From NCBI RefSeq assembly GCF_963921235.1, contig NC_086102.1, positions 137,206,001 to 137,270,000 of the forward strand: a stretch of DNA of 64,000 bases. Reading direction: 5' to 3'. Positions 45,291 to 63,697 of this stretch are shown here, piece after piece. The position numbers were made by a program, and so were the translations under genes. Numbering within the stretch: position 1 is the stretch's first letter; every line of letters begins with the position of its first letter. The notes under the pieces were generated by a model. That model did no database searches. It was not told where the DNA came from and was given only the letters and a program-made list of their open reading frames with translations. This DNA comes from Mobula hypostoma. Taxonomy: Eukaryota.

Positions 45291-45839
45291 GTTTCTTCCT
45301 CCTTTCAGCTGCATGTGGTGTAGTGGTTAGTACTGTCAGAGTACGGTGCTAGCAATCACCGATTGGAGTTTGATTCCAGCCGCTGTCTGTAAGGAGCTTT
45401 TACATTCTCCCCATGAATGTGTGGGTTTCCTCCAGGTGCTCTGGTTTCTTCCCATATTCCAAAAACATATGGTTAATGTTAGTGAGCTGTGGGCATGCTA
45501 TGTTGGTGTTAGAAGCAGGGCGACACTTGTGGACTGACCCAGAACAATCCTTGTTGAAGCAAATGACACATTTCACTGTATGTTTTGATGATAAGTAAAG
45601 CTAATCTCTTCAATCTTAACTGTCTCAATGTAGTTTATAGCAGAGTGTTGGGCTGACAATTGTTGCAGTTAAATTACAGATTTTAATAAATATGTATCTC
45701 ATCTTTCTTTGACAGATTAAATTACTTGCAACTTCTGAGAATGGTCAAATAGCAAAATACAATGTACTAAATGCTGAAACTTGAAGTAATATTTTTAAAT
45801 GTGGGTTGGTGAACAAAAATTTTAGATAATTGCAGATCT

Positions 45840-46030
45840 TTATAGCCAATAAATAGATGTGTGAAATATCTGCGTCTTTTCCAAAAGTCATAGTTATTAA
45901 ACCCTCTATTATTGAGTTGGCAGGAAAGTTCTTTCAGTCTGCCTCAATGTTGTGGTTTGAAAACATTGGTTGTGAAACCGTGAGTCATTAATTGAAGGGA
46001 TTGCAGCATATAAAAGGCAACAGCAGATAA
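45840..46030 (+). promoter_or_regulatory. proximal promoter of the spp2-like gene
   Basis: TATAAAA 46009-46015; AP-1 TGAGTCA 45981-45987; RUNX TGTGGTT 45951-45957; CCAAT 45846-45850; inverted CCAAT 45965-45969. Lies in repeat-free sequence just upstream of exon 1. Confidence 0.7.
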
Positions 46031-46091
46031 AGGCTCAGTGAGAGGGAGAGAGATAGACAGCATCAGCTGCTAAGTACCAAAGCTTGTCAAG

Positions 46092-46146
46092 ATGAAGTCA
46101 TTTCTATTGACTTTCGCTGTACTTCAGGCTTTCCAATACTGTGCTG
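46092..46146 (+). CDS. spp2: spp2-like gene, coding exon 1 (signal peptide MKSFLLTFAVLQAFQYCA + 1 nt)
   Basis: ATG at 46092 in context AAGATGA, about 80 nt after TATAAAA. Basic-hydrophobic-small-residue signal peptide pattern. Phase-1 donor G|GTATTT at 46147. Confidence 0.88.
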
Positions 46147-46288
46147 GTATTTAAAATTTAAAAGTTATTTTTTCATTAAGATGCCATGAAAACTGCTTTC
46201 TGAATGCCGACTGAATGAATTCTAGGAAGTTCAGAACAGGGAGGTTACTATAAATGCTAAGCACCCTTATTGCTGACTTATTTTACAG

Positions 46289-46410
46289 CCATCCCGGTGT
46301 TTGACTTCCTTCCAGTCTTTGAAGATGCACTGAGGCAATCCATTATACAGCTGAACAGTAACACAGCTGGTGGTTACCTGTTTGCTGCCATCAGTGACGA
46401 ACTGTTGCAT
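46289..46410 (+). CDS. spp2: spp2-like coding exon 2 (AIPVFDFLPVFEDALRQSIIQLNSNTAGGYLFAAISDELLH)
   Basis: Branch-point-like CTGAC at 46273, acceptor TTTTACAG, donor GTAAGT at 46411. 122 nt, open, phase-compatible with exon 1. Resembles the mature N-terminus of mammalian Spp24 as I recall it (FPVYDY...DAL..SV.KVN....YLF). Confidence 0.92.
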
Positions 46411-47850
46411 GTAAGTATTATTTCATCAAACAAGACTTAAGTTATTCTTCATTTGTGTATTTATTTTGTTTGATCTTCTCTTCATATTTGTTTTAACCCT
46501 CATGTCCTATTTCTGGCAGTCTGCTGCTGTCACTTCTTTAATTTTTCACACAGATGCAACGTATGTTTCTTACATAACGTATCCTGCAACTTATCATTCA
46601 GTTTTCTGTCTCCTCCTCTTAGGTGTTCTGCACATGTATTTCTACCCACTATTTCTTTGATCTCTTCAGTTGGGATATCAAATATTAATTAAGTCTCTCT
46701 TCTCTCTTTCATTTGTCTTCCTTAACTTTTGTCCCAATGATTCTGTTTTTCTTTCTCTGAGCCTGTTACCTTTTTTAAAATTTAGTCTTGTGAAATAAGT
46801 AGTGTTTTACTGGTCTGAAAAGGCAGTCAATTATCTGATAACCCATTTGAGGTATTCCTTCTGTACCGGTGGGGAGCCCACATGGGTTAAAGGTTTGCTT
46901 CTCTGTTTCAGTGTGGGACGTGGGAAGAGAACATTCCAACAGGTAAACTGAGCTTTTAAGGTACAGAATTGTCCTCAGTCACTAAGTTCACCTGAAGATA
47001 AACAGTGAACCTGGCAAGTTCTTTTTTTCCATTTGTTCAAGGTATTGAGAAGCTTAACTACCAAAGCTTGAAGAACTGCTAGACATTTGATTTAGAAACT
47101 GCCGTAAAATCCTTTATCATCTTTATAGTTTTGTGGTTAAGGTTCCTCCAGCCATGAAAAAGTTGCAGTCAGCAGATGTCCGGAACATTACTCTCGTTAG
47201 CATTGTTCCTTGGACCGTGCCTATCCCTTACTCTAGATGCTGAAGAGCAGGTGGCAGTGCAGTAAACAACAGTAGTGGAAACTGAGTTGCTTATTACCTC
47301 AAGGCAGCAACAATAAACAAGTATTGTGCACAATAGATATACAGATAGGTCTATCTTTCTATAATATTTCTGTCAGCCTCATCCCTTTTCTGCTTACTTT
47401 CAAGATATTCTTAATAATCTATCCCTTGAGTTTTGAACTGGAACTTTGCACCCAGGCTTCAGAATTCCCCTTTGAAGCTTCCTATCACTTTAAGTCTTTC
47501 TTGTTCTTTTAACATGTTCACTGAAACTTACTTCCTTCACCAATTACTATCGCAATCCATAAAAAATGTCTCTAAGTGACTCAAATCTAGTTCCCTGTAG
47601 TGTTTGTCAACTAAATGAGAATGGCTATCATATATCCACAGCTCCTTTGAGCCAACTTCACTGTGAGTTGTAATCCTTGTAATGCTGACCTATCCATATT
47701 GTAAATTGTTAGCAATTTCAATCCCTTGCTTACAAATAATTGCTGCAGGTCAATGTGAAAATGTGCGGTTTCAGTGACTTCAGAAGATTTTCATTTATCT
47801 TAATAAAGCTGGCAATTCACATCGATAAATCTCTATGTTTCATTCCTTAG

Positions 47851-47973
47851 ATTACCCCATCAGGACAAAATGATATTTCTGTGGACCTGAGATTTACTGC
47901 AAGGGAGACACTCTGTCCCAAAAATAGTGGAGTAGAGATCGAAAACTGTCAGCTGAGTAGAAACCCCCTGGCT
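47851..47973 (+). CDS. spp2: spp2-like coding exon 3 (ITPSGQNDISVDLRFTARETLCPKNSGVEIENCQLSRNPLA)
   Basis: Acceptor CATTCCTTAG, donor GTGAGC, 123 nt, phase 0-0. Has the cystatin/cathelin signature L.F..RET.C-x10-C (first disulfide loop). Confidence 0.93.
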
Positions 47974-48396
47974 GTGAGCATTATGTTTTTTTAATTCATT
48001 GACCTTAATGTTGTGGTTATAATGATGAAGAAACTGTGTACAATTGTCCTGATTATACTGTGAAAAATGACAGCATATTCAGAGTACAAGCTAACATTCT
48101 GGAATTGCCATAATGAAGCCTTGTCCTCCACTAGTTGAGCCAAAAGAGTCAAAAGAGAGCAAATACTTAATTGGCTTGAACTTGGCAGTGTGGGATCAAG
48201 CAAGGGTCTATATAAGCATATTTATTTTTTAGATGGAACTACTGAAATGAAGAGAACTTCAAAATATTATTCACACTGTAACAACCCTGGAAATGAAATT
48301 ATTGTTAACTGGATATTTAATGGCATAATAGCATACTTTCAGGCAAGCACTTTCTGTCACTGATAAGCTGACAGATTTCCTCGGGATAATTATTTC

Positions 48397-48476
48397 ATAC
48401 ACACTTAAAACAAAGTCAATATTTAGTTATTTTATTAATGAAATAACTAAATATTGACTTTGTTTTAAGTGTGTAT
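48397..48476. repeat. 80-bp near-perfect palindrome in spp2 intron 3
   Basis: Arm 48397-48432 (ATACACACTTAAAACAAAGTCAATATTTAGTTATTT) is the exact reverse complement of 48441-48476. The centre TATTAATG self-pairs with one T-G mismatch. Confidence 0.97.
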
Positions 48477-48936
48477 AGAGTTTTAATTGATACTTTAATC
48501 ATAAGTTTATGTCACGTCTTCATTTCTGTTCCTCTAACACATTTTAAGATGGGTTCTAGTCCTTCTCCAGGCAAATGCGTAAAATCTTGTACAGTAAAAC
48601 ACTGTTAAGCAGTGCTGTCTTTCCAATAAGATATTAAACCAGTATCCTAGTTATTCTCTCTTGTGGTTGTTAAAGAACATCATGAGATTATTTCAGAGAG
48701 CTAATAAATTACTCCCCTACCCATGTTGATCATTACTGGGGTAGAGTATTTTGCCAATATCACATTGTTGTTTGTGGGAGCTTACTCAGCATGTCATTTT
48801 CTGTATTACCCTAGTAATTCCACTTCAAAAAAAAACCCCAATTGGGTACTCAACATTTTGGGATGCTTTATAATGCACAATATAAATGCAAATCTTTATT
48901 TTACATCAATATGGTTATTCCTACTTTAAACCACAG

Positions 48937-49071
48937 GAAATGGTGACATGTCACAGCAGCGTTGGCTATTCATTAGGAAAATTTGTTGATGTTTTTCTAC
49001 GTTGCAAGAATGCAAGAAGCAGATTTGTGGACAGCAGCAGTGCATCGGCCTCCTTTGAAAGCAGTGAAGAG
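48937..49071 (+). CDS. spp2: spp2-like coding exon 4 (EMVTCHSSVGYSLGKFVDVFLRCKNARSRFVDSSSASASFESSEE)
   Basis: Acceptor CCACAG, donor AG|GTAAGC, 135 nt, phase 0-0. Second Cys pair (C-x17-C) then a Ser cluster ending SSEE, as in Spp24. Overlaps track ORF 48886..49104. Confidence 0.93.
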
Positions 49072-49349
49072 GTAAGCTGCAAGTTTATTCTGAATGCCAG
49101 TTAATATTTATATGGTATTTATTGGATTGCATGAAGTAAAATCTTGTCCTTTGCTACAGATGAGATATAGTTTCACTGCTGCTTATTGACAAGTTCTGAA
49201 TTGCCTTTCCCAATTTACATAAATGTGTTTAAGACCTACTCATTTCTAATCAATCAAATCAATTTATCAATGGATTTTAGTTTAACCTTGAATTTTAAAT
49301 ATTTGCCAAGACATCAAATCATTTTAATTGAATTCATATAATGAAAATT

Positions 49350-49716
49350 GGGTGGTGGAATGGAGATATGTCTCTACCAAAGGAACTGAAAGGCACTCCA
49401 CCCTTGGGCAAGGTGTAGCACCTGCTTGTCCCCCTGGTCTGGATCACGTGAAGCCATGGGATCAGGTGGTGGATGGTCGTATGAGCAGCTGGTGCATAAC
49501 ACAAGTCCTAGTTATGCAACCACTGCTGTCAAGCAGTCACCCTCTGAAGTGATAATGATAATGAAATGATAATGGCTGAGGTACCCATCTTGTAAAGACA
49601 CTACCCAGAAGAAGGCAATAGCAAATCACTTCTGTAGGAAAATTTGCCAAAAACAATCATGGTCATGGAAAAACAATGATCACCCACATCATACAACACA
49701 GCACATAACAACAACA
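49350..49716 (+). mobile_element. RTE-related non-autonomous repeat in spp2 intron 4
   Basis: AGAAGGCAATAGCAAATCACTTC resembles the RTE/BovB motif GAAGGCAATGGCAAACCACTCC; (CAA)n tail. Confidence 0.5.
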
Positions 49717-50009
49717 TTGATAGTGAAAATCACTTACATTTTTAATTGTATGTTTTAAAATGGCAAGCGCCTCCCTGTGAAAAGGTATAATGATATACAA
49801 TCTTAACTCTGGAGCCTGATTCCTAAGTCTGATCCAACCCAATTGTTCATGGTTGGTAAAGGGCCAGTTTAAAACCTGATCTGAGCACAGCTTTCAAACA
49901 AAACTAGATAGTTAGGGTGATGGTGGTAGAGGGTGTGAAACCTAAAGTAATATCCAAAACTGCTGGTAATATGCATTAGCTCTGGAATTCCAGCAAAGGT
50001 GAACAGAAT

Positions 50010-52465
50010 TACAGAAACATAGAAAATAGGTGCAGGAGTAGGCCATTCGGCCCTTCGAGCCTGCACCGCCATTTATTATGATCATGGCTGATCATCCAAC
50101 TCAGAACCCCGCCCCAGCCTTCCCTCCATACCCCCTGATCCCCGTAGCCACAAGGGCCATATCTAACTGCCTCTTAAACATAGCCAATGAACTGGCCTCA
50201 ACAGTTTCCTGTGGCAGAGAATTCCACAGATTCACCACTCTCTGTGTGAAGAAGTTGTTCCTAATCTCGGTCCTAAAAGGCTTCCCCTTTATCCTCAAAC
50301 TGTGATCCCTCGTTCTGGACTTCCCCAACATCGGGAACAATCTTCCTGCATCTAGCCTGTCCAATCCCTTTAGGATTTTATACGTCTCAATCAGATCCCC
50401 CCTCAATCTTCTAAATTCCAACGAGTACAAGCCCAGTTCATCCAGTCTTTCTTCATATGAAAGACCTGCCATCCCAGGAATCAATCTGGTGAACCTTCTT
50501 TGTAGTCCCTCTATGGCAAGGATGTCTTTCCTTAGATTAGGGGACCAAAACTGCACACAATACTCCAGGTGTGGTCTCACCAAGGCCTTGTACAACTGCA
50601 GTAGTACCACTCTGCTCCTGTACTCGAATCCTCTCGCTATAAATGCCAGCATACCATTCGCCTTTTTCACCGCCTGCTGTACCTGCATGCCCACTTTCAA
50701 TGACTGGTGTATAATGACACCCAGGTCTCGTTGCACCTCCCCTTTTCCTAATTGGCCACCATTCAGATAATAATCTGTTTTCCTATTTTTGCCACCAAAG
50801 TGGATAACTTCACATTTATCCACGTTAAATTGCATCTGCCATGAATTTGCCCACTCACCCAACCTATCCAAGTCACTCTGCATCCTCTTAACATCCTCCT
50901 CACAGCTAACACTGCCACCCAGCTTCGTGTCATCCGCAAACATGGAGATGCTGCATTTAATTCCCTCATCCAAGTCATTAATATATATTGTAAACAACTG
51001 GGGTCCCAGAGTGAGCCTTGCGGTACCCCATTAGTCACCGCCTGTCATTCTGAAAAGGTCCCGTTTATTCCCACTCTTTCCTTCCTGTCTGCTAACCAAT
51101 TCTCCATCCACATCAATACCTTACCCCCAATACCGTGTGCTTTAAGTTTGCACACTAATCTCCTGTGTGGGACCTTGTCAAAAACCTTTTGAAAATCCAA
51201 ATATACCACATCCACTGGTTCTCCCCTATCCACTCTACTAGTTACATCCTCAAAAAATTCTATGAGATTCGTCAGACATGATTTTCCTTTCACAAATCCA
51301 TGCTGACTTTGTCCGATGATTTCACCGCTTTCCAAATGTGCTGTTATCACATCTTTGATAACTGACTCCAGCAGTTTCCCCACCACCGACGTTAGGCTAA
51401 CCGGTCTATAATTCCCCGGTTTCTCTCTCCCTCCTTTTTTAAAAAGTGGGGTTACATTAGCCACCCTCCAATCCTCAGGAACTAGTCCAGAATCTAATGA
51501 GTTTTGAAAAATTATCACTAATGCATCCACTATTTCTTGGGCTACTTCCTTAAGCACTCTAGGATGCAGACCATCTGGCCCTGGGGATTTATCTGCCTTT
51601 AATCCCTTCAATTTACCTAACACCACTTCCCTACTAACAAGTATTTCGCTCAGTTCCTCCATCTCACTGGACCCTCTGTCCCCTACTATTTCTGGAAGAT
51701 TATTTATGTCCTCCTTAGTGAAGACAGAACCAAAGTAATTATTCAATTGGTCTGCCATGTCCTTGCTCCCCATAATCAATTCACCTGTTTCTGTCTGCAG
51801 GGGACCTACATTTGTCTTAACCAGTCTTTTCCTTTTTACATACCTATAAAAGCTTTTACGGTCAATTTTTATGTTCCCTGCCAGTTTTCTCTCATAATCT
51901 TTTTTCCCCTTCCTAATTAAGCCCTTTGTCCTCCTCTGCTGAACTCTGAATTTCTCCCAGTCCTCAGGTAAGCCACTTTTTCTGGCTAATTTATATGCTT
52001 CTTCTTTGGAATTGATACTATCCCTAATTTCTCTTGACAGCCACGGGTGCACTACCTTCCTTGATTTATTCTTTTGCCAAACTGGGATGAAAAATTGTTG
52101 TAGTTCATCCATGCAACCTTTAAATGCTTGCCATTGCATATCCACCGTCAATCCTTTAAGTGTCATTTGCCAGTCTATCTTAGCTAATTCACGTCTCATA
52201 CCTTCAAAGTTACCCCTCTAAGTTCAGAACCTTTGTTTCTGAATTAACTATGTCACTCTCCATCTTAATGAAGAATTCCACCATATTATGGTCACTCTTA
52301 CCCAAGGGGCCTCTCATGACAAGATTGCTAATTAACCCTTCCTCATTGCTCAAAACCCAGTCCAGAATAGCCTGCTCTCTAGTTGGTTCCTCAACATGTT
52401 GGTTCAAAAAACCATCCCGCATACATTCCAAGAAATCCTCTTCCTCAGCATCTTTACCAATTTGG
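50010..52465 (-). mobile_element. young 5'-truncated CR1 LINE, antisense in spp2 intron 4
   Basis: Long ORF2 pieces at 51045..52199 (384 aa) and 50101..50997 (298 aa) with full RT motifs (QHGF, LDFQKVFD, PQGS, FADD); only a few lesions. Confidence 0.97.
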
Positions 52466-53138
52466 TCCAGTTGTTGACCCTATGAGTATGATTTTAGAGA
52501 GGATAAGTTTTAGACAAGGTACCAACTTCTCTGCATGCCACAGAGTTTTACCTCCATTGCAGACATCTTCTGGAAATCAGCTTGGTTGACTGGCTTGCTT
52601 TAAGCTTGTAGGTGTACATTGGGAAGGAGTCTCCAAATATAATTGGTAGAAAGGAGAGATGTTTCATTCACAGATGGTCTAATGGGGGAGCTCTTTTCAA
52701 TGTATCTGACTCCGAGCATGTAAGTAAGCTTGGAAATCCATATTCCTGTGTCACAAACACTTGCCTTCCCTCTAAAGCACTGCCCATTTCCCTTCAGTGG
52801 TTGGTATTCCCAAACTCATGGAAAAATCCATTGTAGAGAAGTTAGAAGAGCAGCTTCTAGGCTCATGAGGGTATGTAAATGATCAACTCAGTTTGAACTG
52901 GGATTGTTTTAAGTACCTCATCCGCCACTCGGAAATCCAGGTGGACAAGACGCCCCCAGGCTGTGCCATCAAAAGTTTAACATCATATTTGACCCAAGTA
53001 GCTATTTCTGTGGATTGAATTTACCAGCATTGGCAAAGTTTAGAGATAAAGCATGTTTTGAACAATTAGAAAGGAATGGAAAGCATCTGAGATGGGTGGA
53101 AGTATAAGATAAACGTTGCATTAATTTATCCTTTTCAG

Positions 53139-53156
53139 ACTAAGGTCTTGGTTAAG
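53139..53156 (+). CDS. spp2: candidate spp2 microexon 5 (TKVLVK), 18 nt
   Basis: Strong acceptor TTTATCCTTTTCAG and donor AAG|GTATGT; phase 0-0; open. Supported only by splice signals and frame. Confidence 0.6.
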
Positions 53157-54216
53157 GTATGTTGAGGAATTGAATATTATGCCAATTTTGTTATGCTATA
53201 ATGTTATGAATAACTTCTAAGTCAAGCGTGCTATGGAACAAAAAAATGTAAAACTCCTTGTATCATGAGCCATCGCCATATCTTCAGTCAAGCTTAAGAT
53301 GCACTTACGTTGTTATAGCTATCTCACACAGATTTGTGTGATTTATTGGGAGATGGGGAGATAGCTGCAGTGTTTAGAGCTTAGTCATAGGATTACCATA
53401 CTTTGGGATTGCATGTGGCTGATGGAGCCCACCTGGCCCCTCAGAATGTAAAATCAGTTCAATTACACTGACAGGAAAAGAGATCCTCCCTCAAGAGCAT
53501 GTGACAATGATTTTACAGGCCTAAAGCACCAAAATATCCTCCCCTGCAATTCCAAAAGAAAGGAACTTGGATTTTAGGAGAAAAATATTGGTATTACCCC
53601 CAGGGAGCTGTCCTTAGTCACCAAAAAGAACTATCTCTTATTCTGTATTAAGAAAATCAAACTAATAAATACAAGAGAATGATATGGATTTGTATTATTA
53701 ATCCATATGATATAGAAACCTATTTTGGCTCATTGAATCAATAATCATTCTCCGAACAATCCCATTCTCCCTGTAATTTTCCTTATAATTGATTCTCCCC
53801 CCATTTTATCAATTCCCCCTATTTCCTACCACTCATTTATAGACAAAGTGTAATTTAAAACCATTTAACCTATCAACCTGCACATCTTTGAGGTGGGGAG
53901 GTAAATGGAATGCTCACAGTCACAGGGAGAACACACAAATGTCACACAGACAGCACCAGAGGCTGCAACTGAACCAGAGCTATTGGTAACACCATCCTGA
54001 CACCTATCACTATTGAGCACCCCGGACTTGGAGACAGATCAGTTCAGGAATGGGGAGTCAGGGAGCTAAGTAGATGCCTTCTGCACATGGTTTTACAAGC
54101 CTTCCTCCCAGGCCTATTTGAATCTACAGCTTGTACCAATTACTCTGCCTTGAAAAGTATTTTCTTCACAACATCTTTCTTCACTTCTAACATCAGCCTT
54201 GATGTTTTCATTGTAG

Positions 54217-54264
54217 GTCATGCACCAGAGGGGATCAAAATTTCAGGATGAGTACTACTCATCA
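54217..54264 (+). CDS. spp2: candidate spp2 exon 6 (VMHQRGSKFQDEYYSS), 48 nt
   Basis: Acceptor GTTTTCATTGTAG, donor GTAAGT at 54265; phase 0-0; open. Confidence 0.65.
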
Positions 54265-55126
54265 GTAAGTATAAATGACCATTAAAATCTGTCCAGTCAC
54301 TACATGGTGGTCACATAGCCGTGCCTCTTCCAGTTATCAAGCATCACCAGGTGCTAAAGGCGTAGACCTCTGAGAAATCCTGGGAGGCCAGTGGAGTACG
54401 AGGAGGTGGCTGAAGACCTTATTACTCATTCACAGTGTGTAGACATTGGCCATTTAACTTCCACCCCTGGGAGACAATGAACCAAATCTTTAAGCCACCG
54501 TCATGTATGCCCTTTGCACTCACGACTTAAGTAACCTGGTGGTCAATAAACATCCTCCAGTTCAAAGGGTATGTGAGTTCCTGTCTCCATGGCACAGAGT
54601 GGTGCCAATTGTCACGTCAGCAGAGAACCTTTGGTGACATTTGACATGAGTTAGAAATGCATCTCGTAAGGTATCACAGAATGGAAAGTCTCACATTGAT
54701 TACCAGGATAATGCACCCCATTTCTTTAAAATTCAGATCCCTTTGCCTTCTGTGGCACTGAGTCGTGGCACTTGTTAACTGGTTCCAGTGATACCTCCAT
54801 AGAGGCCATTATCTGAGGAGAATATTCAGACAGCGTGCTGTCAGTTGTGTGGGAGCTATACTGGAGTTCTATGCTACATCTTATTTCAGGCAGTGTCTTC
54901 CTGAGTTTGTGAGGCCACGTGGTAGAAGTGTCCCAGGCATGTACCCTCGTGGCACAAGTCATTCCAAATTAAAAGGACATCTTGTGAATACTGGTACAGT
55001 GGAGATATCATCAGATATCAAACACACTCCAATTGCTACCACTTGCCCATGGGTTGCTAATGACTAAAATGACATAGGATCCAACCATGAGACTATTGGG
55101 TTTACACTCTCTTCGCTCCACACTAG

Positions 55127-55264
55127 ATCGACTGGAATAGGCAACAACCTGATGAACACCAGCGGAACGGCTCTGCTATGGAAAAGAAAATTAACCAGAG
55201 ACAGAATATGAACCGGGGTCTGTCAACCAAGAAGATTCCACGTCGTAAACAGAGGCCGGAATAA
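55127..55264 (+). CDS. spp2: spp2-like terminal coding exon (IDWNRQQPDEHQRNGSAMEKKINQRQNMNRGLSTKKIPRRKQRPE*)
   Basis: Pyrimidine-rich acceptor CTCTCTTCGCTCCACACTAG. Open in phase 0 to TAA at 55262-55264. Arg/Lys-rich like the Spp24 C-terminus. AATAAA follows about 145 nt later. Confidence 0.75.
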   Translation: MDWNRQQPDEHQRNGSAMEKKINQRQNMNRGLSTKKIPRRKQRPE

Positions 55265-55408
55265 GCAGTCAAAATACGTACAAAACTGCATAAGTATATA
55301 CCATGCATGCTTTAAAGTAAGCAGTAGAATCTAAAAAAAATCTTAATTGTATCTTTCATTCAGTGATATAAGATACATTGCTCTTTATGTACAAGTTGAA
55401 AGCAAGAC

Positions 55409-55414
55409 AATAAA
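55409..55414 (+). terminator. polyadenylation signal AATAAA of the spp2-like gene
   Basis: First AATAAA after the stop codon; TGTA elements upstream and GT-rich sequence downstream. Confidence 0.6.
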
Positions 55415-56831
55415 GCAAGTCGATGATAGTGTGAAATGTCCTGTCACAGTTTTGTGATAACTGACAATCTGAAAATGCCCCAGACTTGTTCTCAGGCACT
55501 GAAATGAATCATAAATTAATTAATGAAGTTGAAAATATCTCAGACTATTGCCTTCAAAAGAATTCTTGGTAGATAAACCAAATCTGGAACATAAATGAAA
55601 CTAGAGTCACAGCAGGTTATATTTATAAGTTAGGTAAGAAGTGCTTCTCCTGTTAACGTTCCCATGGTTTGCGCGACCTCCTGGTCGGCTTTGGATGAGT
55701 TGAAGAGAGTGTGGAGAATTGTTTTCCAGAATGAAAATTGTTGGTCCAGAAGACTTTCTGTTTCTTGGCTTGTCCAAGCAAATTAAATGTCTGAGGTTCG
55801 AGGAGGAGGATGGAGAAGTGTAACTGGATGTGAATGCAGGAAACTGAGGCAGGAGTCAAATGCTCAGTTGGGGAGTCTGCTCCACCTTTCCACATCGTGA
55901 CTAAACCTTGGCCTCACTCCATTTCCTGACTTCATTCCTGAAAGGACTGGTTATATTTTCAGAGTCTGTCTGTTTGTCTCAAACTCATTAGCTACTACCC
56001 TATCAGTTCATTATAATAACCCATGAAAAAATGGGACAACTTATCAATGAAACTTCAGAGTTCCAGGAACTACAATGTAGTTTGTGTGATCAAAGCTCAA
56101 ATGTATCACATTATCATGGTACAGTCCAGACAGATGCCAAATCCTTTCACACGTGTATGATGATCAGAATTGCTCACACAGCTTCATGTGTGATATAACC
56201 AGGGATTAATCTGCCTATATAGCATTTCTATAGACCTCCTTCCAATATTTTGTATTAGAAGTCAAATCATAAACATGGAAACATGCTTTTAGGCCCAACT
56301 CATCAACATCAATGGATGGTACTTAACCCATCTCCCAGTACTTGGTTCATAACCTTCTATGCCAAGGTGATTCAAGTGTTTATCTAGATCTTTCTTAAAT
56401 GCTATCAGCAACCCAGTTTCAACCCTTCTCTCAGGCAGTACATTCCAGATACCACTTTCTGGGTGAAGGTCTCTTCAAACATGCCCTTGAATTCTTTTTT
56501 GCCTTTGCTAAATATATGAATTTAGAATTTAGAATCAGGTTTAATATCATCAGCATACATCATGAAACTTGTTTTTTTGGCAGCAGTACAATGCAATACA
56601 CAGTAATAAAAGCTATAAATTACAATAAATATACAGTATATAACAAAATAATTTAGTTAAGTCGTGCAAAAAGGAAGGGGAAAAATACTGAGGTAGTGTC
56701 AAAGGGTTCAATGTCCATTTAGAAATCTGATGGCAGAGGGGAAGAAGCTGTTCCTGAAACATTGAGTGCATCTCATCTAGTTTATCCACCAAAATTATAG
56801 GGAAAAATTTTCTACAATATATTCTATGTAC

Positions 56832-57130
56832 ATAGGCATCCGTTAGTCTCGTAAGACCATGGATTTGCGCCTTGGAAGGTTTCCAGGGTGCAGGCCTGGG
56901 CAAGGTTGTATGGAAGACCGGCACTTGCCCATGCTGCAAGTCTCCCCTCTCCACGCCACCGATGTTGTCCAAGGGAAGGGCACTAGGGCTGATACAGCTT
57001 GGCATCAGTGTCGTCGCAGAGCAATGTGTGGTTAGGTGCCTTGCTCAAGGACACAACACACTGCCTCAGCTGAGGCTCGAAATAGTGACCTTCAGATCAC
57101 TAGACCGACGCCTTAACCACTTGGCCACTT
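56832..57130 (-). mobile_element. tRNA-derived SINE, well preserved
   Basis: Minus-strand GTGGCCAAGTGGTTAAGGCGTC A-box head and GTGTTGTGTCCTTGAGCAAGGCAC core. Confidence 0.75.
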
Positions 57131-57239
57131 ATACTGTATGTATAGCCCTCATAATATTATATACTTCAATTGTTCCTTCTTTTAACCTCCTCCATTCCAA
57201 GGATAACAACCCAGCCTCTCCAGTTTCTGCTCATAACTC

Positions 57240-58308
57240 TTACGGCTTCATCATAAAATTATGCTGTGAACCTCCACCATCAACGCTGCCATCAACTGTA
57301 TCTCTTCCATTTCAAGCATGTCTGCTCTTACCCCATCCTCCCGCCACCCTACCAGGGATAGGGCTCTTCGTCCTCACCAGCCTCCCCATCCAGCACATAA
57401 TTCTCCGGAACTTCCGTCATCTCGAACGGGATCCCATCACCAAGCACATCTTTCCCTACCAACCCTCCACTTTCTGCTACCCGCAAGAATTGCTCTCTAG
57501 CTGACTCCCTTGTCCATTCATGACTCCCCATTGATCTCCCTCCTGCCACTTATGCTTGCACACGGAACAAGTGCTACACCTGCCCCTGCACCTCCTCCCT
57601 CACTACCATTCAGGCCCCAAACGATCCTTCCAGTTGAGGTGATACTTCACCTGTGGGTCTGTAGGTGTTATCTACTGTATCTGGGGTGCTCTCGGTGTGG
57701 CCTTCTGTATATCGGTGAGACCTGACGCAGATTGGAAGACCATTTCGCCAAGCACCTACATTCCGTCTGCCAGGAAAAGCAGGATCTCCCACTGGCCACC
57801 CATTTTAATTCCACTTCCTATTCCCATTCTGACTTGTCAGTCCATGGCCTCCTCTACTGTCGTGATGAGGCCTCATTCAGGTTGGATGAGCAACACCTTA
57901 TACAGTATTCCATCTGATAGCATGAATGTTGATTTCTCGAACTTCCAGTAACTGTCTCCCCTCCTGTCCCCATCCCTATTTCCCTCTCTCACCTTATCCC
58001 CTTACCTGCCCATCACCTCCCTCTGGTGCTCCTCCCATTTTCTTTCTTCCATGGCCTCTGTCTTCTCCTATGATTCCACTTTCTCGAGTCCTGTATCTTC
58101 TTCACCAATCAACTTCCCAGCTCTTTACTTCATTCCTCCACCCTCTATTTCACCTATCACCTTGTACTTCTTCCTCCCCTTGCCCGTCTTCCTTACTCTG
58201 ACTCCTCATCTGTTTTCTCCAGTCCCGATAAAGGGTCTCAGCATGAAATGTCGAGTGTACTCTTTTCCATAGCTGCTGCTTGGCCTGCTGGGTTCCTCCA
58301 GCATTTTG
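57240..58308 (+). mobile_element. Penelope fragment (linker, GIY-YIG, terminal repeat)
   Basis: IQHIILRNFRHLERDPITKHIFP, CSRCGLLYIGET, DLPLATHFNS. Confidence 0.9.
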
Positions 58309-58955
58309 TGAACCTCCTCCTCAACCACTCCAGGATTACTACATTCTTCCTGTAGCATGATGAACAGAACTGCATGCTGTACTTCACCTGAAGTTTTATG
58401 AAGTTGGAGCATAACTCCCTTACTTCTATATTAAATGCCCTGGCTACCTTTACAATCTGAGCAATGCCTTTGAAGGTCAGTATCCCATATGTCTTTCTAA
58501 CCACATATTCAACTTGTGTTACCACCTTCAAGGCTGTATGGATGAACTCCAATTTCCCTGTTCCTCAATACTCCTGCGACAGTATTCTAGTCCTTTTATT
58601 AAAAAGGATGGCATTCCATTTGGTAGATCAAAGGCAAGTTCACTGCTAGCCAGCAATGATGGCCCATTCTTAGTGTTCTAAATGCTTGTTAGACCACTTA
58701 AAAGGGAAAGTTACTCTTAAAGCTTGCTAAGCCACAGTTTCTTACAGGCCAGAATCAGAACTAGATTCAGTTTTATTATCAATGACGTGAAATTTATTGT
58801 TTTGTGGCATTAGTACAGTGCAACACATAAAAAGATATTATAAGTTAGAATAAGAAATATATTAAAAATAAACATATAATGAAAAAGAGCAAAAACTGAG
58901 GTAGTGTTCACAGTTTCATTGTCCATTCAGAAATCTGTTGGCAAAGGTGAAGAAA

Positions 58956-61900
58956 CTATTGGAAATTGGTAAGTATGATGTTGCGGGAATAACAGAGACA
59001 TGGCTTCAAGTGGACAGGGCCTGGGAAATGAATATTCAAGGATATACGTCCTATCAAAAGGACAGACTGATGGGCAGAGGGGGTGGGGTGGCTCTGTTGG
59101 TGAGGAATGATATTCAGTCCCTTGCGAGGGGGGACATAGAATCAGGAGACGTAGACATAGAGTCAGTATGGATAGAACTGAGAAATTCTAACAGTAGAAA
59201 GACCCTAATGGGAGTTATCTACAGGCCCCCAAACAGTAGTCTGGATGTAGGGTGTAAGTTGAATCAAGAGTTAAAATTGGCATGTCGCAAAGGTAATGCT
59301 ACAGTTGTTATGGGGGACTTCAACATGCAGGTAGACTAGAGGAATCAGGTTGGTACTGAACCCCAAGAAAGGGAGTTTGTGGAGTCCCTCTGAGGTGGAT
59401 TCTTGGAACAGCTTGTACTGGATCCTACCAGAGTGAACGCAATTCTAGATTTAGTGTTGTGCAATGAACTGGATTTGATCAGGGACCTCGAGGTAAAGGA
59501 GCCATTAGGAGGTAGTGACCATAATATGATAAGTTTTAATCTACAATTTGAGAGGGAGAAGGGAAACTCGGAAGTGTCAGTATTACAGTTGAACAAAGGG
59601 AACTATGGTGCTATGAGGGAGGAGCTGGCCAAAGTTCAATCAAACAATACCCTAGCAGGGATGACAGTGGAACAGCAATGGCAAGTGTTTCTGGGAATAA
59701 TGTGGAAGGTGCAGGATCAGTTCATTCCAAAGAGGAAGAAAGATCCTAAGGGGAGTAAGGGGAGGACGTGGCTGACAAGGGAAGTAATGGACAGTATAAA
59801 AATAAAAGAGAAGAAGTACAACATAGCAAAGATGAGTGGGAAGCTGGAAGATTGGGAAACTTTTAAAGACCAACAGAAGGTAACTAAAAAGGCAATACGC
59901 AGAGAAAAAATGAGGTACAAAGGTAAACTAGCCAAGAATATAAAGGAGGATAGTAAAAGCTTCTTTAGGTATGTGAAAAGGAAAAAAATAGTTAAGACCA
60001 AAATTGGGCCCTTGAAGACAGAAGCGGATGAATTTATTATGGGGAACAAGGAAATGGCAGACGAGTTGAAACAGGTACTTTGGATCTGTCTTCACTAGGG
60101 AAGACACAATCTCCCAGATGTAATAGTGGCCAAAGGACCTAGAGTAATGGATGAATTACTCTAATGAATTAGGAAGCAAGGATCAGATGGGTCTATTGAG
60201 GAATATAGGGAAGCAAGAAAGGAGCTTAAGAAGGGGCTGAGAAGAGCAAGAAGGGGGCATGAGAAGGCCTTGGCAGGTAGGGTAAAGGAAAACCCCAAGG
60301 CATTCTTCAATTATGTGAAGAAAAAAAGGATGACAGGAGTAAAAGTAGGACCGATTAGAGATAAAGGTGGGAAGATGTGCCTGGAGGCTGTGGAAGTGAG
60401 CGAGGTCCTCAATGAATACTTCTCTTCGGTATTCACCAATGAGAGGGAACTTGATGATGGTGAGGACAATATGAGTGAGGTTGATGTTCTGGAGCATGTT
60501 GATATTAAGGGAGAGGAGGTGTTGGAGTTGTTAAAATACATTAGGACAGATAAGTCCCCGGGGCCTGACGGAATATTCCCCAGGCTGCTCCACGAGGCGA
60601 GAGAAGAGATTGCTGAGCCTCTGGCTAGGATCTTTATGTCCTCGTTGTCCATGGGAATGGTACCGGAGGATTGGAGGGAGGCGAATGTTGTTCTCTTGTT
60701 CAAAAAAGGTAATAGGGATAGTCCAGGTAATTATAGACCAGTGAGCCTTACATCTGTGGTGGGAAAGCTGTTGGAAAAGATTCTTAGAGATAGGATCTAT
60801 AGGCACTTAGTGAATTATGGTCTGATCAGGGACAGTCAGCATGGCTTTGTGAAGGGCAGATGGTGTCTAACAAGCCTGATAGAGTTCTTTGAGGAGGTGG
60901 CCAGGCATATAGATGAGGGTAGTGCAGTGGATGTGATCTATATGGATTTTAGTAAGGCACTTGACAAGGTTCCACACGGTAGGCTTATTCAGAAAGTTAG
61001 AAGGCATGGGATCCAGGGAAGTTTGGCCAGGTGGATTCAGAATTGGCTTGCCTGCAGAAGGCAGAGGGTGGTGGTGGAGGGAGTACACTCAGATTGGAGA
61101 TTGTGACTAGTAGTGTCCCACAAGGTTCTGTTCTGGGACCTCTACTTTTCGTGATTTTTATTAACGACCTGGATGTGGGGGTAGAAGGGTGGGTTGGCAA
61201 GTTTGCAGACGACACAAAGGTTGGTGGTATTGTAGATAGTGTAGAGGATTGTCAAAGATTGCAGAGAGACATTAATAGGATGCAGAAGTGGGCTGAGAAG
61301 TGGCAGATGGAGTTCAACCCGGAGAAGTGTGAGGTGGTACACTTTGGAAGGACAAACTCCAAGGCAGAGTACAAAGTAAATGGCAGGATACTTGGTAGTG
61401 TGGAGGAGCAGAGGGATCTCGGGGTACATGTCCACAGATCCCTGAAAGTTGTCTCACAGGTGGATAGGGTAGTTAAGAAAGCTTATGGGGTGTTAGCTTT
61501 CATAAGTCAGGGGATAGAGTTTAAGAGTCACGATGTAATGATGCAGCTCTATAAAACTCTGGTTAGGCCACACTTGGAGTACTGTGTCCAGTTCTGGTCA
61601 CCTCACTATAGGAAGGATGTGGAAGCATTGGAAAGGGTACAGAGGAGATTTGCCAGGATGCTGCCTGGTTTAGAAAGTATGCATTATGATCAGAGATTAA
61701 GGGAGCTAGGGCTTTACTCTTTGGAGAGAAGGAGGATGAGAAGAGACATGATAGAGGTGTACAAGATAATAAGAGGAATAGATAGAGTGGATAGCCAGCG
61801 CCTCTTCCCCAGGGCACCACTGCTCAATACAAGAGGACATGGCTTTAAGGTAAGGGGTGGGAAGTTCAAGGGGGATATTAGAGGAAGGTTTTTTACTCAG

Positions 61901-63697
61901 AGAGTGGTTGGTGCATGGAATGCACTGCCTGAGTCAGTGGTGGAGGCAGATACACTAGTGAAGTTTAAGAGACTACTAGACAGGTATATGGAGGAATCTA
62001 AGGTGGGGGCTTATATGGGAGTCAGGGTTTGAGGGTCGGCACAACATTGTGGGCCAAAGGGCCTGTACTGTGCTGTACTATTCTATGTTCTATGTTCTAA
62101 TTGAAGGAAATTTATATTAGGCAGAAAATGGTGTTGGATAGGCTGTTGGGTCTGAAGGCTGATAAGTCCCCGGGACCTGATGGTCTGCATCCCAGGGTAC
62201 TTAAGGAGGTGGCTTTAGAAATCGTGGATGCATTGATAATCATTTTCCAATGTTCTATAGATTCATGATCAGTTCCTGTGGATTGGAGGGTGGCTAACGT
62301 TGTCCATCTCTTCAAGAAGGGAGGAAGAGAGAAAACAGGGAATTATAGACCAGTTAGCCTGACGTCGGTGGTGGGAAAGATGCTGGAGTCAATTATAAAA
62401 GATGAAATTACGACACATCTGGATAGCAGTAACAGGATCGGTCCAAGTCAGCATGGATTTACGAAGGGGAAATCGTGCTTGACTAATCTTCTGGAATTTT
62501 TTGAGGATGAAACTATGAAAATGGACAAGGGAGAGCCAGTGGATGTAGTGTACCTGGACGTTCAGAAAGTCCCACATAGGAGATTAGTGGGCAAAATTAG
62601 GGCACATGGTATTGGGGGCAGAGTACTGACATGGATTGAAAATTGGCTGGCTGACAGAAAACAAAGAGTAGCGATTAACGGGTCCCTATCGGAATGGCAG
62701 GCAGTGACCAATAGGGTACCGCGGGATTCAGTGCTGGGACCGCAGCTGTTTACAATATATATTAATGATTTAGATGAGGGAATTAAAAGTAACATTAGCA
62801 AATTTGCCAATGACACAAAGCTGGGTGGCAGTGTGAAATGTGAGGAGGATGTTATGAGAATGCAGGGTGACTTGGACAGGCTGGGTGAGTGGGCAGATGC
62901 ATGGCAGATGCAGTTTAATGTGGATAAATGTGAGGTTATCCACTTTGGTGGTAAGAACGGGAAGGCAGATTATTATCTAAATGGAGTCAAGTTAGGAAAA
63001 GGGGAAGCACAACGAGATCTAGGTGTAGTTGTACATCAGTCACTGAAAGCAAGCATGCAAGTACAGCAGGCAGTGAAGAAAGCTAATGGCATGCTGGCCT
63101 TCATAACAAGGGGAACTGAGTATAAGACCAAAGAGGTCCTTCTGCAGCTGTACAGGGCCCTGGTGTGCAGTTTTGGTCTCCAAATTTGAGGAAGGACATT
63201 CTTGCTATTGAGGGAGTGCAGCGTAGGTTCACAAGGTTAATTCCCGGGATGGCGGGACTGTCATATGTCGAAAAATTGGAGCCACTGGGCTTGTATACTC
63301 TGGAGTTTAGAAGGCTGAGAGGGGATCTTATTGAAACATATAAGATTATTAAGGGATTGGACATGCTGGAGGCAGGAAGCATCGTCCCGCTGATGGGTGA
63401 GTCCAGAACCAGAGGCCACAGTTTAAGAATAAGGGGTAGGCCATTTAGAACGGAGTTGAGGAAAAACTTTTTCACTCAGAGAGTGGTGGATATGGTCTGT
63501 CCCAGAAGGCAGTGGAGGCCAAGTCTCCGAATGCTTTCAATAAAGAGATGGATAGAGCTCTTAAAGATAGCGGAATCAAAGGTTATGGGGATAAGGCAGG
63601 AACTGGATACTGATTGTGGATGATCAGCCATGATCACAGTGAATGGTGGTGCTAGCTGGAAGGGCCAAATGGCCTACTCCTGCATCTATTGTCTATT
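58956..63697 (+). mobile_element. outer CR1 LINE (endonuclease through 3' end), split at 60157/62099 by a second CR1 and itself inside a Rex1-type tail
   Basis: GITETWL, YRPPN, GDFN, SDHN at 58960-59540. Sequence resumes at 62099 (AATTGAAGGAAATTTATATTAGG), then KSPGPDG and RT ORF 62278..63189. Rex1 sequence continues at 63698. Confidence 0.93.
60171..62098 (+). mobile_element. inner, younger 5'-truncated CR1 of a different subfamily
   Basis: ORFs 60270..61106 and 61031..62032 form ORF2 with a single frameshift; (TTCTATG)n tail at about 62081-62098. Confidence 0.96.

What the first reader, a model, noticed from the sequence alone, without database searches (positions are those of the whole stretch)
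46009..55414. Hidden 7-exon spp2 (secreted phosphoprotein 24)-like gene in a probable cartilaginous fish
Seen in sequence: seven phase-compatible GT-AG exons give a 212-aa protein with signal peptide, four-Cys cystatin/cathelin domain, Ser cluster ending SSEE and basic tail, bracketed by TATA and AATAAA. The ORF track captures only exon 4. Established: Spp24 is a cystatin-superfamily phosphoprotein of plasma and bone matrix that binds BMP/TGF-beta through the RET.C..C loop. Inference: this is a diverged orthologue or paralogue in a lineage without endochondral bone. The loop reads RETLCPKNSGVEIENC, and there appears to be an extra stretch (KNARSRFVD) between Cys4 and the Ser cluster relative to the mammalian protein as I recall it.
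Basis: partly seen in the sequence, partly recalled or inferred. Interest (0 to 1): 0.72.

Follow-up and report, generated by a model that had tools for sequence, protein, structure and literature searches.

The report
Devil-ray spp2.1 gene, already published
The stretch holds a real, intact gene for a secreted cystatin-like phosphoprotein of the Spp24 family, but it is the already annotated and published spp2.1 gene of the lesser devil ray, so the finding is correct in kind and ordinary.

Summary
The multi-exon gene is real. Six GT-AG coding exons on the + strand (46092-55264) give a 206-aa protein. That protein is 100% identical to RefSeq XP_062906094.1, "secreted phosphoprotein 24-like" of Mobula hypostoma (LOC134347655). 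The same accession is listed as Mhy7655 in the dataset of Debiais-Thibaud et al., BMC Biol 2026 (PMC13188829), which describes the spp2 expansion in cartilaginous fishes.

My tree places it, with 100/100 support, in a single-copy clade with catshark Spp2.1. The whole protein passes Pfam's Spp-24 cut-off. An AlphaFold model shows a cystatin fold, and its nine best Swiss-Prot structural matches are all Spp24. A skate cDNA contig maps onto exactly these six exons.

- **"Hidden":** the gene is annotated and published.
- **Seventh exon:** the 18-nt microexon behind the 212-aa model is in no orthologue protein and not in the skate transcript.
- **BMP-binding element:** the published BMP/TGF-beta-binding element is the 19-aa Cys3-Cys4 loop, not the RET.C..C loop.

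The spacer after Cys4 is real relative to human, but it is present in all 16 orthologues.

This scan found the neighbouring spp2.3 copies of the same cluster before, on DNA 123-192 kb upstream, with the same verdict. Novelty: already known. Interest is low.

The parts
45981..46016 (+). Conserved proximal promoter block with TGAGTCA (45981-45987) and a TATA-like TATAAAAG (46009-46016)
   Evidence: Both motifs are conserved in the alignment with the Pristis and Amblyraja genomic loci. The TATA role is unproven: the skate cDNA 5' end maps directly after the motif.
46019..46146 (+). Exon 1: 5' UTR (about 46019-46091) plus CDS 46092-46146, encoding the signal-peptide region (aa 1-18 and the first base of codon 19)
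   Evidence: ATG, GT donor and phase. The skate cDNA contig L001 aligns to 46016-46144. The 5' adapter junction is seen.
46289..46410 (+). Exon 2: aa 19-59, the N-terminal helix and first strand of the cystatin-like domain
   Evidence: AG/GT and phase. Skate cDNA block 46286-46404. dN/dS 0.15 against skate. AF2 helix 26-43.
47851..47973 (+). Exon 3: aa 60-100, holding RET.C and the Cys81-Cys92 loop
   Evidence: Alone it hits Pfam Spp-24 at E 3.6e-5. Skate cDNA block 47851-47974. The same boundaries occur in Pristis and Amblyraja. dN/dS 0.14.
48937..49071 (+). Exon 4: aa 101-145, holding the 19-aa Cys105-Cys123 hairpin (TRH1-like), the 9-aa spacer and the Ser cluster DSSSASASFESSEE with three SxE motifs
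   Evidence: Skate cDNA block 48937-49071. AF2 strands 102-112 and 115-124.
50012..52462 (-). LINE-type retroelement inserted antisense in intron 4; not part of the gene product
   Evidence: RVT_1 hits on ORFs 51045-52199 and 50101-50997. It is absent from the orthologous Pristis intron, where L002 6699/6700 is contiguous.
53139..53156 (+).
   Evidence: It is one of 10 chance candidates. It is absent from all orthologue proteins and from the skate cDNA. AG and GT are both lost in Amblyraja and kept in Pristis.
54217..54264 (+). Exon 5: 48 nt, aa 146-161, the start of the disordered tail
   Evidence: Skate cDNA block 54242-54266. YSS is conserved in orthologues.
55127..55416 (+). Exon 6: CDS 55127-55264 (aa 162-206 with the basic tail, stop TAA 55262-55264), then the 3' UTR with AATAAA at 55409-55414
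   Evidence: The skate cDNA aligns to 55130-55416. AATAAA and the adjoining upstream 3' UTR stretch are conserved in skate and Pristis.

Best explanation
This is the spp2.1 gene of the lesser devil ray Mobula hypostoma (RefSeq LOC134347655, protein XP_062906094.1). It is the single-copy, one-to-one orthologue of catshark spp2.1 and sits at the edge of the chondrichthyan spp2 tandem cluster.

Shown here: six coding exons give a 206-aa precursor. It has a hydrophobic signal sequence (about aa 1-19) and a cystatin-fold domain (about aa 25-124; one helix packed on a four-stranded antiparallel sheet). The domain carries four invariant cysteines, placed to close two loops, Cys81-Cys92 and Cys105-Cys123. 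After it come a Ser cluster with three S-x-E motifs (aa 132-145) and a disordered tail of net charge +7 (aa 146-206). The cystatin domain is under purifying selection.

Inferred from the family: the protein is secreted. Its S-x-E serines are phosphorylated by the Golgi kinase Fam20C. The phosphoserine cluster binds calcium phosphate. The 19-aa Cys105-Cys123 beta-hairpin, helped by the C-terminal tail, binds BMP/TGF-beta-type ligands. It does not inhibit cysteine proteases, because the cystatin QxVxG and PW loops are absent.

Inferred from the catshark orthologue: it is made mainly in gill, olfactory and oral epithelia and denticles, not in liver or mineralising cartilage. Its role is therefore more likely epithelial ion and mineral handling or growth-factor buffering than skeletal mineralisation.
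For: - **Identity:** blastp of the spliced model gives 206/206 identical residues to P0019, which is XP_062906094.1 of Mobula hypostoma. The CDS span of 9173 bp equals the span of the gene called on GCA_963921235.1. The same accession appears as LOC134347655 / Mhy7655 in supplementary file 9 of PMC13188829.
- **Family:** Pfam Spp-24 scores E 1.3e-9 and 38.5 bits against a cut-off of 26, over aa 65-124.
- **Clade:** the tree of 49 chondrichthyan proteins puts the window protein in a 16-row clade with catshark Spp2.1 (XP_038644123.1) at 100/100. That clade has one row per species and branching that follows batoids versus sharks.
- **Structure:** the AF2 cystatin-like domain has pLDDT 84-95, and the tail is below 50. 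Foldseek ranks nine Spp24 entries first, at E 5e-12 to 2e-8, then kininogens, cathelicidins and cystatins. PDB matches are cystatin F, cystatin E/M and the cathelin-like domain, with TM by target 0.6-0.72.
- **Transcript:** skate cDNA contig L001 (900 nt, 211-aa CDS) aligns in six blocks that coincide with the six exons and both UTRs.
- **Selection:** dN/dS against skate is 0.32 overall and 0.14-0.15 in exons 2-3.
- **Conservation:** 60 invariant columns, including all four Cys and the S/E cluster, in 16 orthologues.
- **Expression and family functions:** PMC13188829 and PMC3753320.
Against: - There are no Mobula transcript data in the collections searched. The splice junctions rest on the RefSeq model, on orthologue proteins and on a skate cDNA.
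- Every functional step (secretion, phosphorylation, mineral and BMP binding, tissue of expression) is transferred from mammals or catshark. None is tested in a ray.
- The Cys3-Cys4 loop matches the bovine TRH1 loop in length (19 aa) and in its disulfide frame; I made no formal sequence comparison of the two loops.
- PMC3753320 itself says the true binding site of Spp24 is not defined.
- I could not put bony-vertebrate Spp24 sequences into my tree, so the relation of the spp2.1 clade to the osteichthyan gene rests on the paper.
- Only four S-x-E motifs occur, fewer than the 'large number' the paper reports for catshark duplicates.
Confidence: 0.93

Rival explanations
1. The reader's 7-exon, 212-aa model is the true or an alternative product. 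An 18-nt phase-0 microexon, most likely 53139-53156 (TKVLVK), would be spliced in between the SSEE exon and the 48-nt exon.
For: The candidate has a good polypyrimidine-AG acceptor and a GTATGT donor. Pristis keeps AG, GT and an open frame at the orthologous place. Microexons are easily missed by automatic annotation.
Against: Ten stop-free AG-N18-GT candidates occur in this intron by chance. None of the 16 orthologue proteins has six extra residues there. The skate cDNA goes straight from the SSEE exon into the 48-nt exon's homologue. Amblyraja has lost both splice dinucleotides. Identity to Pristis around the site is 79%, against about 74% for the whole intron, so there is no clear conservation island.
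Confidence: 0.04
2. It works as a cathelicidin-type precursor: a cathelin-like pro-domain whose cationic C-terminal tail is cleaved off as a host-defence peptide in gill and oral epithelia.
For: The domain also gives a weak Cathelicidins hit at 18.9 bits and matches the cathelin-like domain of LL-37 structurally. The tail has net charge +7 and is disordered. The catshark orthologue is expressed in gill epithelium and taste buds.
Against: The Cathelicidins score is below the cut-off of 21, while Spp-24 is above its own. All nine best structural hits are Spp24. The Ser/SxE cluster is an Spp24 feature. There are six coding exons, not the four of cathelicidin genes (that number is from my own knowledge). 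The tail is rich in Q, N and R and poor in hydrophobic residues, so it is not amphipathic, and it evolves fast, with dN/dS 0.67.
Confidence: 0.02
3. It is a decaying or non-functional duplicate of the spp2 cluster that merely keeps an open frame.
For: A LINE has landed in intron 4. The Mobula protein ends four residues earlier than the other orthologues.
Against: The ORF is intact and all splice sites are canonical. dN/dS is 0.14-0.15 in the domain exons. It is a single copy kept in 16 elasmobranch species, with 60 invariant columns. The catshark orthologue reaches 6145 TPM in gills. The promoter and 3' UTR are conserved across batoids.
Confidence: 0.01

Closest known systems
Catshark Spp2.1 (Scyliorhinus canicula XP_038644123.1; clade spp2.1 of Debiais-Thibaud et al. 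2026, PMC13188829)
   Same: One-to-one orthologue: 55% identity over the full length and the same clade at 100/100. The architecture is the same: signal peptide, four-Cys cystatin-like domain, 9-residue spacer, Ser cluster ending SSEE, and a basic C-terminus with the P-x-RKQ motif.
   Different: Mobula lacks the last four residues and has several small tail indels. Expression in Mobula is unknown.
Mammalian, avian and teleost Spp24 / SPP2 (e.g. human Q13103)
   Same: Same Pfam family, above the cut-off. It is the best structural match at E 5e-12 to 2e-8. The C-x10-C first loop and the 19-aa Cys3-Cys4 loop have the same lengths, and a Ser cluster ending SSEE follows the domain.
   Different: Only 21-26% identity. 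Nine residues separate Cys4 from the Ser run, against two in human. The tail sequence is different. The bony-vertebrate gene is a single liver-expressed copy, whereas this is one of four chondrichthyan clades, and its catshark orthologue is silent in liver.
Chondrichthyan spp2.2 / spp2.3 paralogues (cartilage-mineralisation copies of the same cluster)
   Same: Same family and same chromosome cluster, with 21 invariant columns shared, including the four Cys.
   Different: Only 25-30% identity, separated by long branches of 1.78 and 0.95. The paper reports many SxE motifs in their tails and an arginine-rich C-terminus only in spp2.1, and the spp2.2/2.3 sequences I read have acidic tails, whereas this tail is basic (net +7) with four SxE motifs in the whole protein. 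They are expressed in mineralising chondrocytes; catshark spp2.1 is not.
Cathelicidin precursors and type-2 cystatins
   Same: Same cystatin fold with two C-terminal disulfide loops.
   Different: It scores below the Cathelicidins cut-off. There is no QxVxG or PW inhibitory loop (read from the sequence). A phosphoserine cluster is present.

Membership tests
Spp24 / SPP2 (Pfam PF07448) | Whole protein scores above Pfam's gathering cut-off for the Spp-24 cystatin-like domain | tested here: met
   38.5 bits against 26, E 1.3e-9, aa 65-124 on profile positions 4-63 of 64. Exon 3 alone gives 24.3 bits.
Spp24 / SPP2 (Pfam PF07448) | N-terminal signal peptide (secreted protein) | tested here: inconclusive
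   The hydrophobic stretch FLLTFAVLQAF is followed by C-A-A before Ile20, which fits the -3/-1 rule (read). No signal-peptide predictor was available. The paper reports a signal peptide for the family.
Spp24 / SPP2 (Pfam PF07448) | Cystatin-like fold with four conserved cysteines | tested here: met
   Cys81, Cys92, Cys105 and Cys123 are invariant in 37 family members. AF2 gives a helix plus four strands at pLDDT 84-95. Cystatin and cathelin matches have TM by target 0.6-0.72. Disulfide geometry was not measured.
Spp24 / SPP2 (Pfam PF07448) | Serine-rich region with S-x-E (Fam20C-type) sites directly after the domain | tested here: met
   DSSSASASFESSEE at aa 132-145, with SxE at 139, 142 and 143. 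S135, S137, S139, E141, S142, E144 and E145 are invariant in 16 orthologues. Phosphorylation itself is not testable here.
Spp24 / SPP2 (Pfam PF07448) | 19-aa disulfide-bounded TRH1-like loop that binds BMP/TGF-beta | tested here: inconclusive
   The loop length (19 aa, Cys105-Cys123) and the beta-hairpin are met, and the definition comes from PMC3753320. I made no formal sequence comparison with the bovine loop, and binding cannot be tested with these tools.
Spp24 / SPP2 (Pfam PF07448) | Best structural relatives are Spp24 rather than other cystatin-superfamily members | tested here: met
   Ranks 1-9 are Spp24 of pig, rat, human, mouse, chicken, sheep, cow, trout and salmon. Kininogens start at rank 10.
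Chondrichthyan spp2.1 clade (PMC13188829) | Groups with catshark Spp2.1 to the exclusion of spp2.2 and spp2.3, with one copy per species | tested here: met
   A 16-row clade at 100/100, present in 100% of the bootstrap trees counted, with one row per species. Catshark labels were taken from supplementary file 9 and from accessions. spp2.Like and bony-vertebrate sequences were not in my tree.
Chondrichthyan spp2.1 clade (PMC13188829) | Location in the sh3bp4/arl4c - nme9/vps8/cops8 spp2 locus | not testable with these tools
   The 64-kb window holds no other spp2 exon and no flanking gene was found. The paper lists 12 Mobula genes under a 'chr6' heading, this one among them. Earlier notes place spp2.3 copies 123 and 192 kb upstream.
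Cathelicidins (Pfam PF00666) | Score above the gathering cut-off | tested here: not met
   18.9 bits against 21.
Inhibitory type-2 cystatins (Pfam PF00031) | Pfam Cystatin hit and the QxVxG / PW protease-binding loops | tested here: not met
   No Cystatin hit at E up to 1 for P0019. The first hairpin loop reads PSGQND and the second LGK, with no QxVxG or PW (read).

The most novel reading that the evidence does not exclude
The single-copy spp2.1 clade is not a mineralisation protein at all. It would be an epithelial (gill, olfactory, oral) secreted factor whose conserved basic C-terminus, ending in the P-x-RKQ motif, is released or used as a separate functional module. That could be a cathelicidin-like defence peptide or a glycosaminoglycan or ligand anchor. 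If so, one branch of the Spp2 family was re-purposed before sharks and rays split. A smaller variant is that batoids use the 18-nt microexon at 53139-53156 in an alternative isoform.
Probability: 0.05. Interest if true: 0.45.

Novelty: already known. Interest (0 to 1): 0.1.

Why it matters
The gene, its family name, its clade and its evolutionary context are all already public, in RefSeq LOC134347655 and in BMC Biol 2026;24:121. A few small points seem not to be stated in the parts of that paper I read:
- the exon-level structure of spp2.1, with phase 1 after exon 1 and phase 0 at every later junction;
- the strong purifying selection on the domain exons against a fast-evolving tail;
- the batoid-conserved promoter block;
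- the Mobula-side LINE insertion in intron 4.

The biological question that remains open is what spp2.1 does in gill and sensory epithelia. That needs experiments, not sequence analysis.

Tried and rejected
- **My own false exon.** I first took 46912-46942 (31 nt), or its 15-nt sub-version 46928-46942, for an exon between exons 2 and 3. It breaks the frame or adds five residues that no orthologue has.
- **Single-exon Pfam scans.** Only exon 3 gave a hit; exons 2, 4 and 6 alone gave none. The spliced protein has no reference of its own, so full-length searches had to wait until the identical database protein P0019 was found.
- **phmmer with exon 3 against 1.84 billion representatives.** It gave 7 hits, 2 of them true orthologues. 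The rest were mammalian cathelicidin tandems, a two-domain bamboo-shark Spp24 prediction and two repeat proteins that are spurious.
- **Reaching bony-vertebrate Spp24.** The search with P0005 and the profile search with alignment A1 listed only cartilaginous-fish proteins, and the search with P0002 had returned only spp2.1 orthologues. Of the 144 profile hits only 120 were shown, and those were all chondrichthyan. My tree therefore lacks osteichthyan, lamprey and spp2.Like rows.
- **Tandem paralogues in the window.** tblastn with the model and with ten family members found nothing beyond this gene.
- **Other scans.** Rfam at gathering threshold gave no match in 64 kb. Tandem Repeats Finder on 44-58 kb gave none.
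- **Own genome record.** The Mobula genomic record could not be fetched because the file is too large.
- **Cathelicidins in cartilaginous fishes.** A literature check gave no clear statement either way.

Full report
**1. What is in the sequence**

I read 45500-56000 and rebuilt the gene in a script. Six coding exons on the + strand join in frame: 46092-46146, 46289-46410, 47851-47973, 48937-49071, 54217-54264 and 55127-55264. Every acceptor is AG after a pyrimidine run and every donor is GT. The exon 1/2 junction is phase 1 and all later ones are phase 0. The CDS is 621 nt, or 206 aa.

The protein has these features:
- a hydrophobic N-terminus;
- Cys at 81, 92, 105 and 123;
- the loop RETLCPKNSGVEIENC;
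- a 19-aa Cys105-Cys123 loop;
- the spacer KNARSRFVD;
- a Ser cluster ending SSEE, with SxE at 139, 142 and 143;
- a 61-aa tail of net charge +7.

**2.

The intron 49072-54216 contains ten stop-free AG-N18-GT candidates. The only one with good signals is 53139-53156 (TKVLVK).

- No orthologue protein from 16 elasmobranch species has six extra residues at that point.
- A skate cDNA contig passes directly from one exon to the next.
- In Amblyraja both the AG and the GT are lost. In Pristis they are kept, but the surrounding identity (79%) is hardly above the intron average of about 74%.

I therefore treat the microexon as a chance match, with a residual probability of about 4%.

**3. Identity**

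A phmmer search with exon 3 against 1.84 billion representatives found a 214-aa horn-shark protein that matches over aa 60-100, the same position as in the model. Searching with that protein returned 14 "secreted phosphoprotein 24-like" proteins, one per elasmobranch species.

The spliced model is 206/206 identical to one of them, P0019. P0019 is XP_062906094.1 of Mobula hypostoma; the M. birostris protein is 97% identical. The gene called for it on assembly GCA_963921235.1 spans 9173 bp, exactly the length of 46092-55264. So the window is lesser-devil-ray DNA, and RefSeq already carries this six-exon model.

**4. It is published**

A full-text search found Debiais-Thibaud et al., BMC Biol 2026;24:121 (PMC13188829). 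The paper makes these points:
- Bony vertebrates have one spp2 gene, whereas cartilaginous fishes have a tandem cluster.
- The cluster falls into four clades: spp2.1, spp2.2, spp2.3 and spp2.Like.
- The locus is flanked by sh3bp4/arl4c and nme9/vps8/cops8.
- spp2.2 and spp2.3 are expressed in mineralising chondrocytes.
- spp2.1 is single-copy, has an arginine-rich C-terminus and is expressed in gill epithelium, taste buds, brain/olfactory tissue and denticles. It reaches 6145 TPM in gills and 0.07 in liver.

Its supplementary table lists [quoted passage not shown], and the protein is in its alignments. The catshark orthologue I had retrieved, P0011 = XP_038644123.1, is the paper's Spp2.1.

**5. 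Tests done here**

*Family.* Pfam Spp-24 scores 38.5 bits against a cut-off of 26. Cathelicidins scores 18.9 against 21, and there is no Cystatin hit.

*Clade.* I fetched about 130 further chondrichthyan family members and labelled the catshark and Mobula rows by accession. I then built an IQ-TREE tree of 49 rows.
- The window protein sits with M. birostris, then Pristis, then skates.
- This lies inside a 16-row clade that contains catshark Spp2.1 (100/100, present in 100% of the bootstrap trees counted).
- The clade has one row per species and is separated by long branches from a spp2.2 + spp2.3 + elephant-shark group.

*Fold.* AlphaFold2 with a 37-row alignment gives a confident domain, pLDDT 84-95 over about aa 30-125. 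It has helix 26-43 and strands 48-62, 67-82, 102-112 and 115-124. The tail is disordered.
- Foldseek against Swiss-Prot models ranks nine Spp24 proteins first, from pig, rat, human, mouse, chicken, sheep, cow, trout and salmon, at E 5e-12 to 2e-8.
- Kininogens, cathelicidins and cystatins follow.
- Against the PDB the domain matches cystatin F, cystatin E/M and the cathelin-like domain of LL-37.

*Transcript.* A 900-nt contig assembled from run SRR13269317 (L001) encodes the 211-aa skate orthologue.
- It aligns to the window in six blocks: 46016-46144, 46286-46404, 47851-47974, 48937-49071, 54242-54266 and 55130-55416. These are the six exons with both UTRs.
- Pristis and Amblyraja genomic loci show the same exon 3 and exon 6 boundaries.

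*Selection.* Nei-Gojobori dN/dS against the skate CDS is 0.32 overall. By exon it is 0.15 (exon 2), 0.14 (exon 3), 0.36 (exon 4) and 0.67 (exons 5 and 6).

**6.

*BMP/TGF-beta-binding element.* The element described for Spp24 (TRH1, the "BMP binding peptide") is a 19-aa loop closed by a disulfide, beginning CRSTV in cattle (PMC3753320). That is the Cys3-Cys4 loop, here Cys105-Cys123 in exon 4, not the RET.C..C loop of exon 3. The same paper stresses that the real binding site is undefined and that the C-terminus contributes.

*The "extra stretch" KNARSRFVD.* It is real against human, where two residues separate Cys4 from the Ser run in the paper's alignment. An equivalent 9-residue spacer is in all 16 spp2.1 orthologues, and the one spp2.3-type sequence I read has about seven residues there.

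*The TATA motif.* The motif is conserved in three batoid genomes, together with an upstream TGAGTCA. However, the skate cDNA contig begins with what I recognise, from my own knowledge, as a template-switch cDNA adapter. Its first genuine bases align to about 46017-46019, directly after the motif rather than 25-30 nt downstream. The motif's role as the TATA box is therefore open.

*The 3' end.* The 3' end of that contig runs into what I recognise as a transposase adapter a few bases after AATAAA. It shows only that the 3' UTR reaches the signal.

**7. Surroundings**

The window holds no second spp2 gene. Intron 4 contains a 2.45-kb LINE-type element in antisense (50012-52462), with reverse-transcriptase ORFs of 384 and 298 aa. 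It is missing from the Pristis intron. Downstream, 56.8-63.6 kb carries further reverse-transcriptase ORFs. Rfam and tandem-repeat scans were empty. Earlier notes of this scan describe spp2.3 copies 123 and 192 kb upstream and reached the same "published in 2026" verdict.

**8. How it most likely works**

*Shown:* an intact, conserved gene for a signal-bearing cystatin-fold protein with a Ser/SxE cluster and a basic disordered tail.

*Inferred from the family* (PMC13188829; PMC3753320):
- secretion;
- Fam20C phosphorylation of the SxE serines;
- calcium-phosphate binding by the phosphoserine cluster;
- binding of BMP/TGF-beta ligands by the Cys3-Cys4 hairpin with help from the tail;
- no protease inhibition, since the QxVxG and PW loops are absent.

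*Inferred from catshark:* an epithelial rather than hepatic or skeletal site of synthesis.

**9. Verdict**

The family assignment is right. "Hidden" and the microexon are wrong, and the binding loop is misplaced. The gene is already annotated and published, so novelty is "already known" and interest is low.

Noticed in passing
window 50012-52462 (- strand): A 2.45-kb LINE-type retroelement lies in intron 4, with two long reverse-transcriptase ORFs (384 and 298 aa). It is absent from the orthologous Pristis intron, so it was inserted on the Mobula side and looks young.
   Followed up: partly
window 56872-63623 (+ strand): A string of ORFs of 210-333 aa, three of them with RVT_1 hits and interrupted by frame changes. 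This is one or more decayed retroelements just downstream of the gene.
   Followed up: partly
window 48397-48476: A 40+40-nt palindrome, 98% complementary with no spacer, lies in intron 3. It may be a small foldback or MITE-like element.
   Followed up: no
window 45981-46019; L001 1-25: The promoter block with TGAGTCA and TATAAAAG is conserved in Mobula, Pristis and Amblyraja. The skate cDNA contig starts with a template-switch adapter, and its cDNA begins right after the TATA-like motif, not 25-30 nt downstream.
   Followed up: partly
P0007 (Rhincodon typus isoform X3): This predicted whale-shark isoform of the orthologue skips the exon that carries Cys3, Cys4 and the Ser cluster (169 aa). 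It may be an annotation artefact or a real exon-skipping form.
   Followed up: no
window 55244-55264: The Mobula protein (both species) stops four residues earlier than 13 of the other 14 orthologues: it ends RRKQRPE, whereas they carry four more residues and end in E.
   Followed up: no
P0001, P0004 (hits): Database proteins of 331-348 aa consist of four or five tandem cathelin-like repeats of mammalian type. They look like fused gene predictions across cathelicidin clusters.
   Followed up: no
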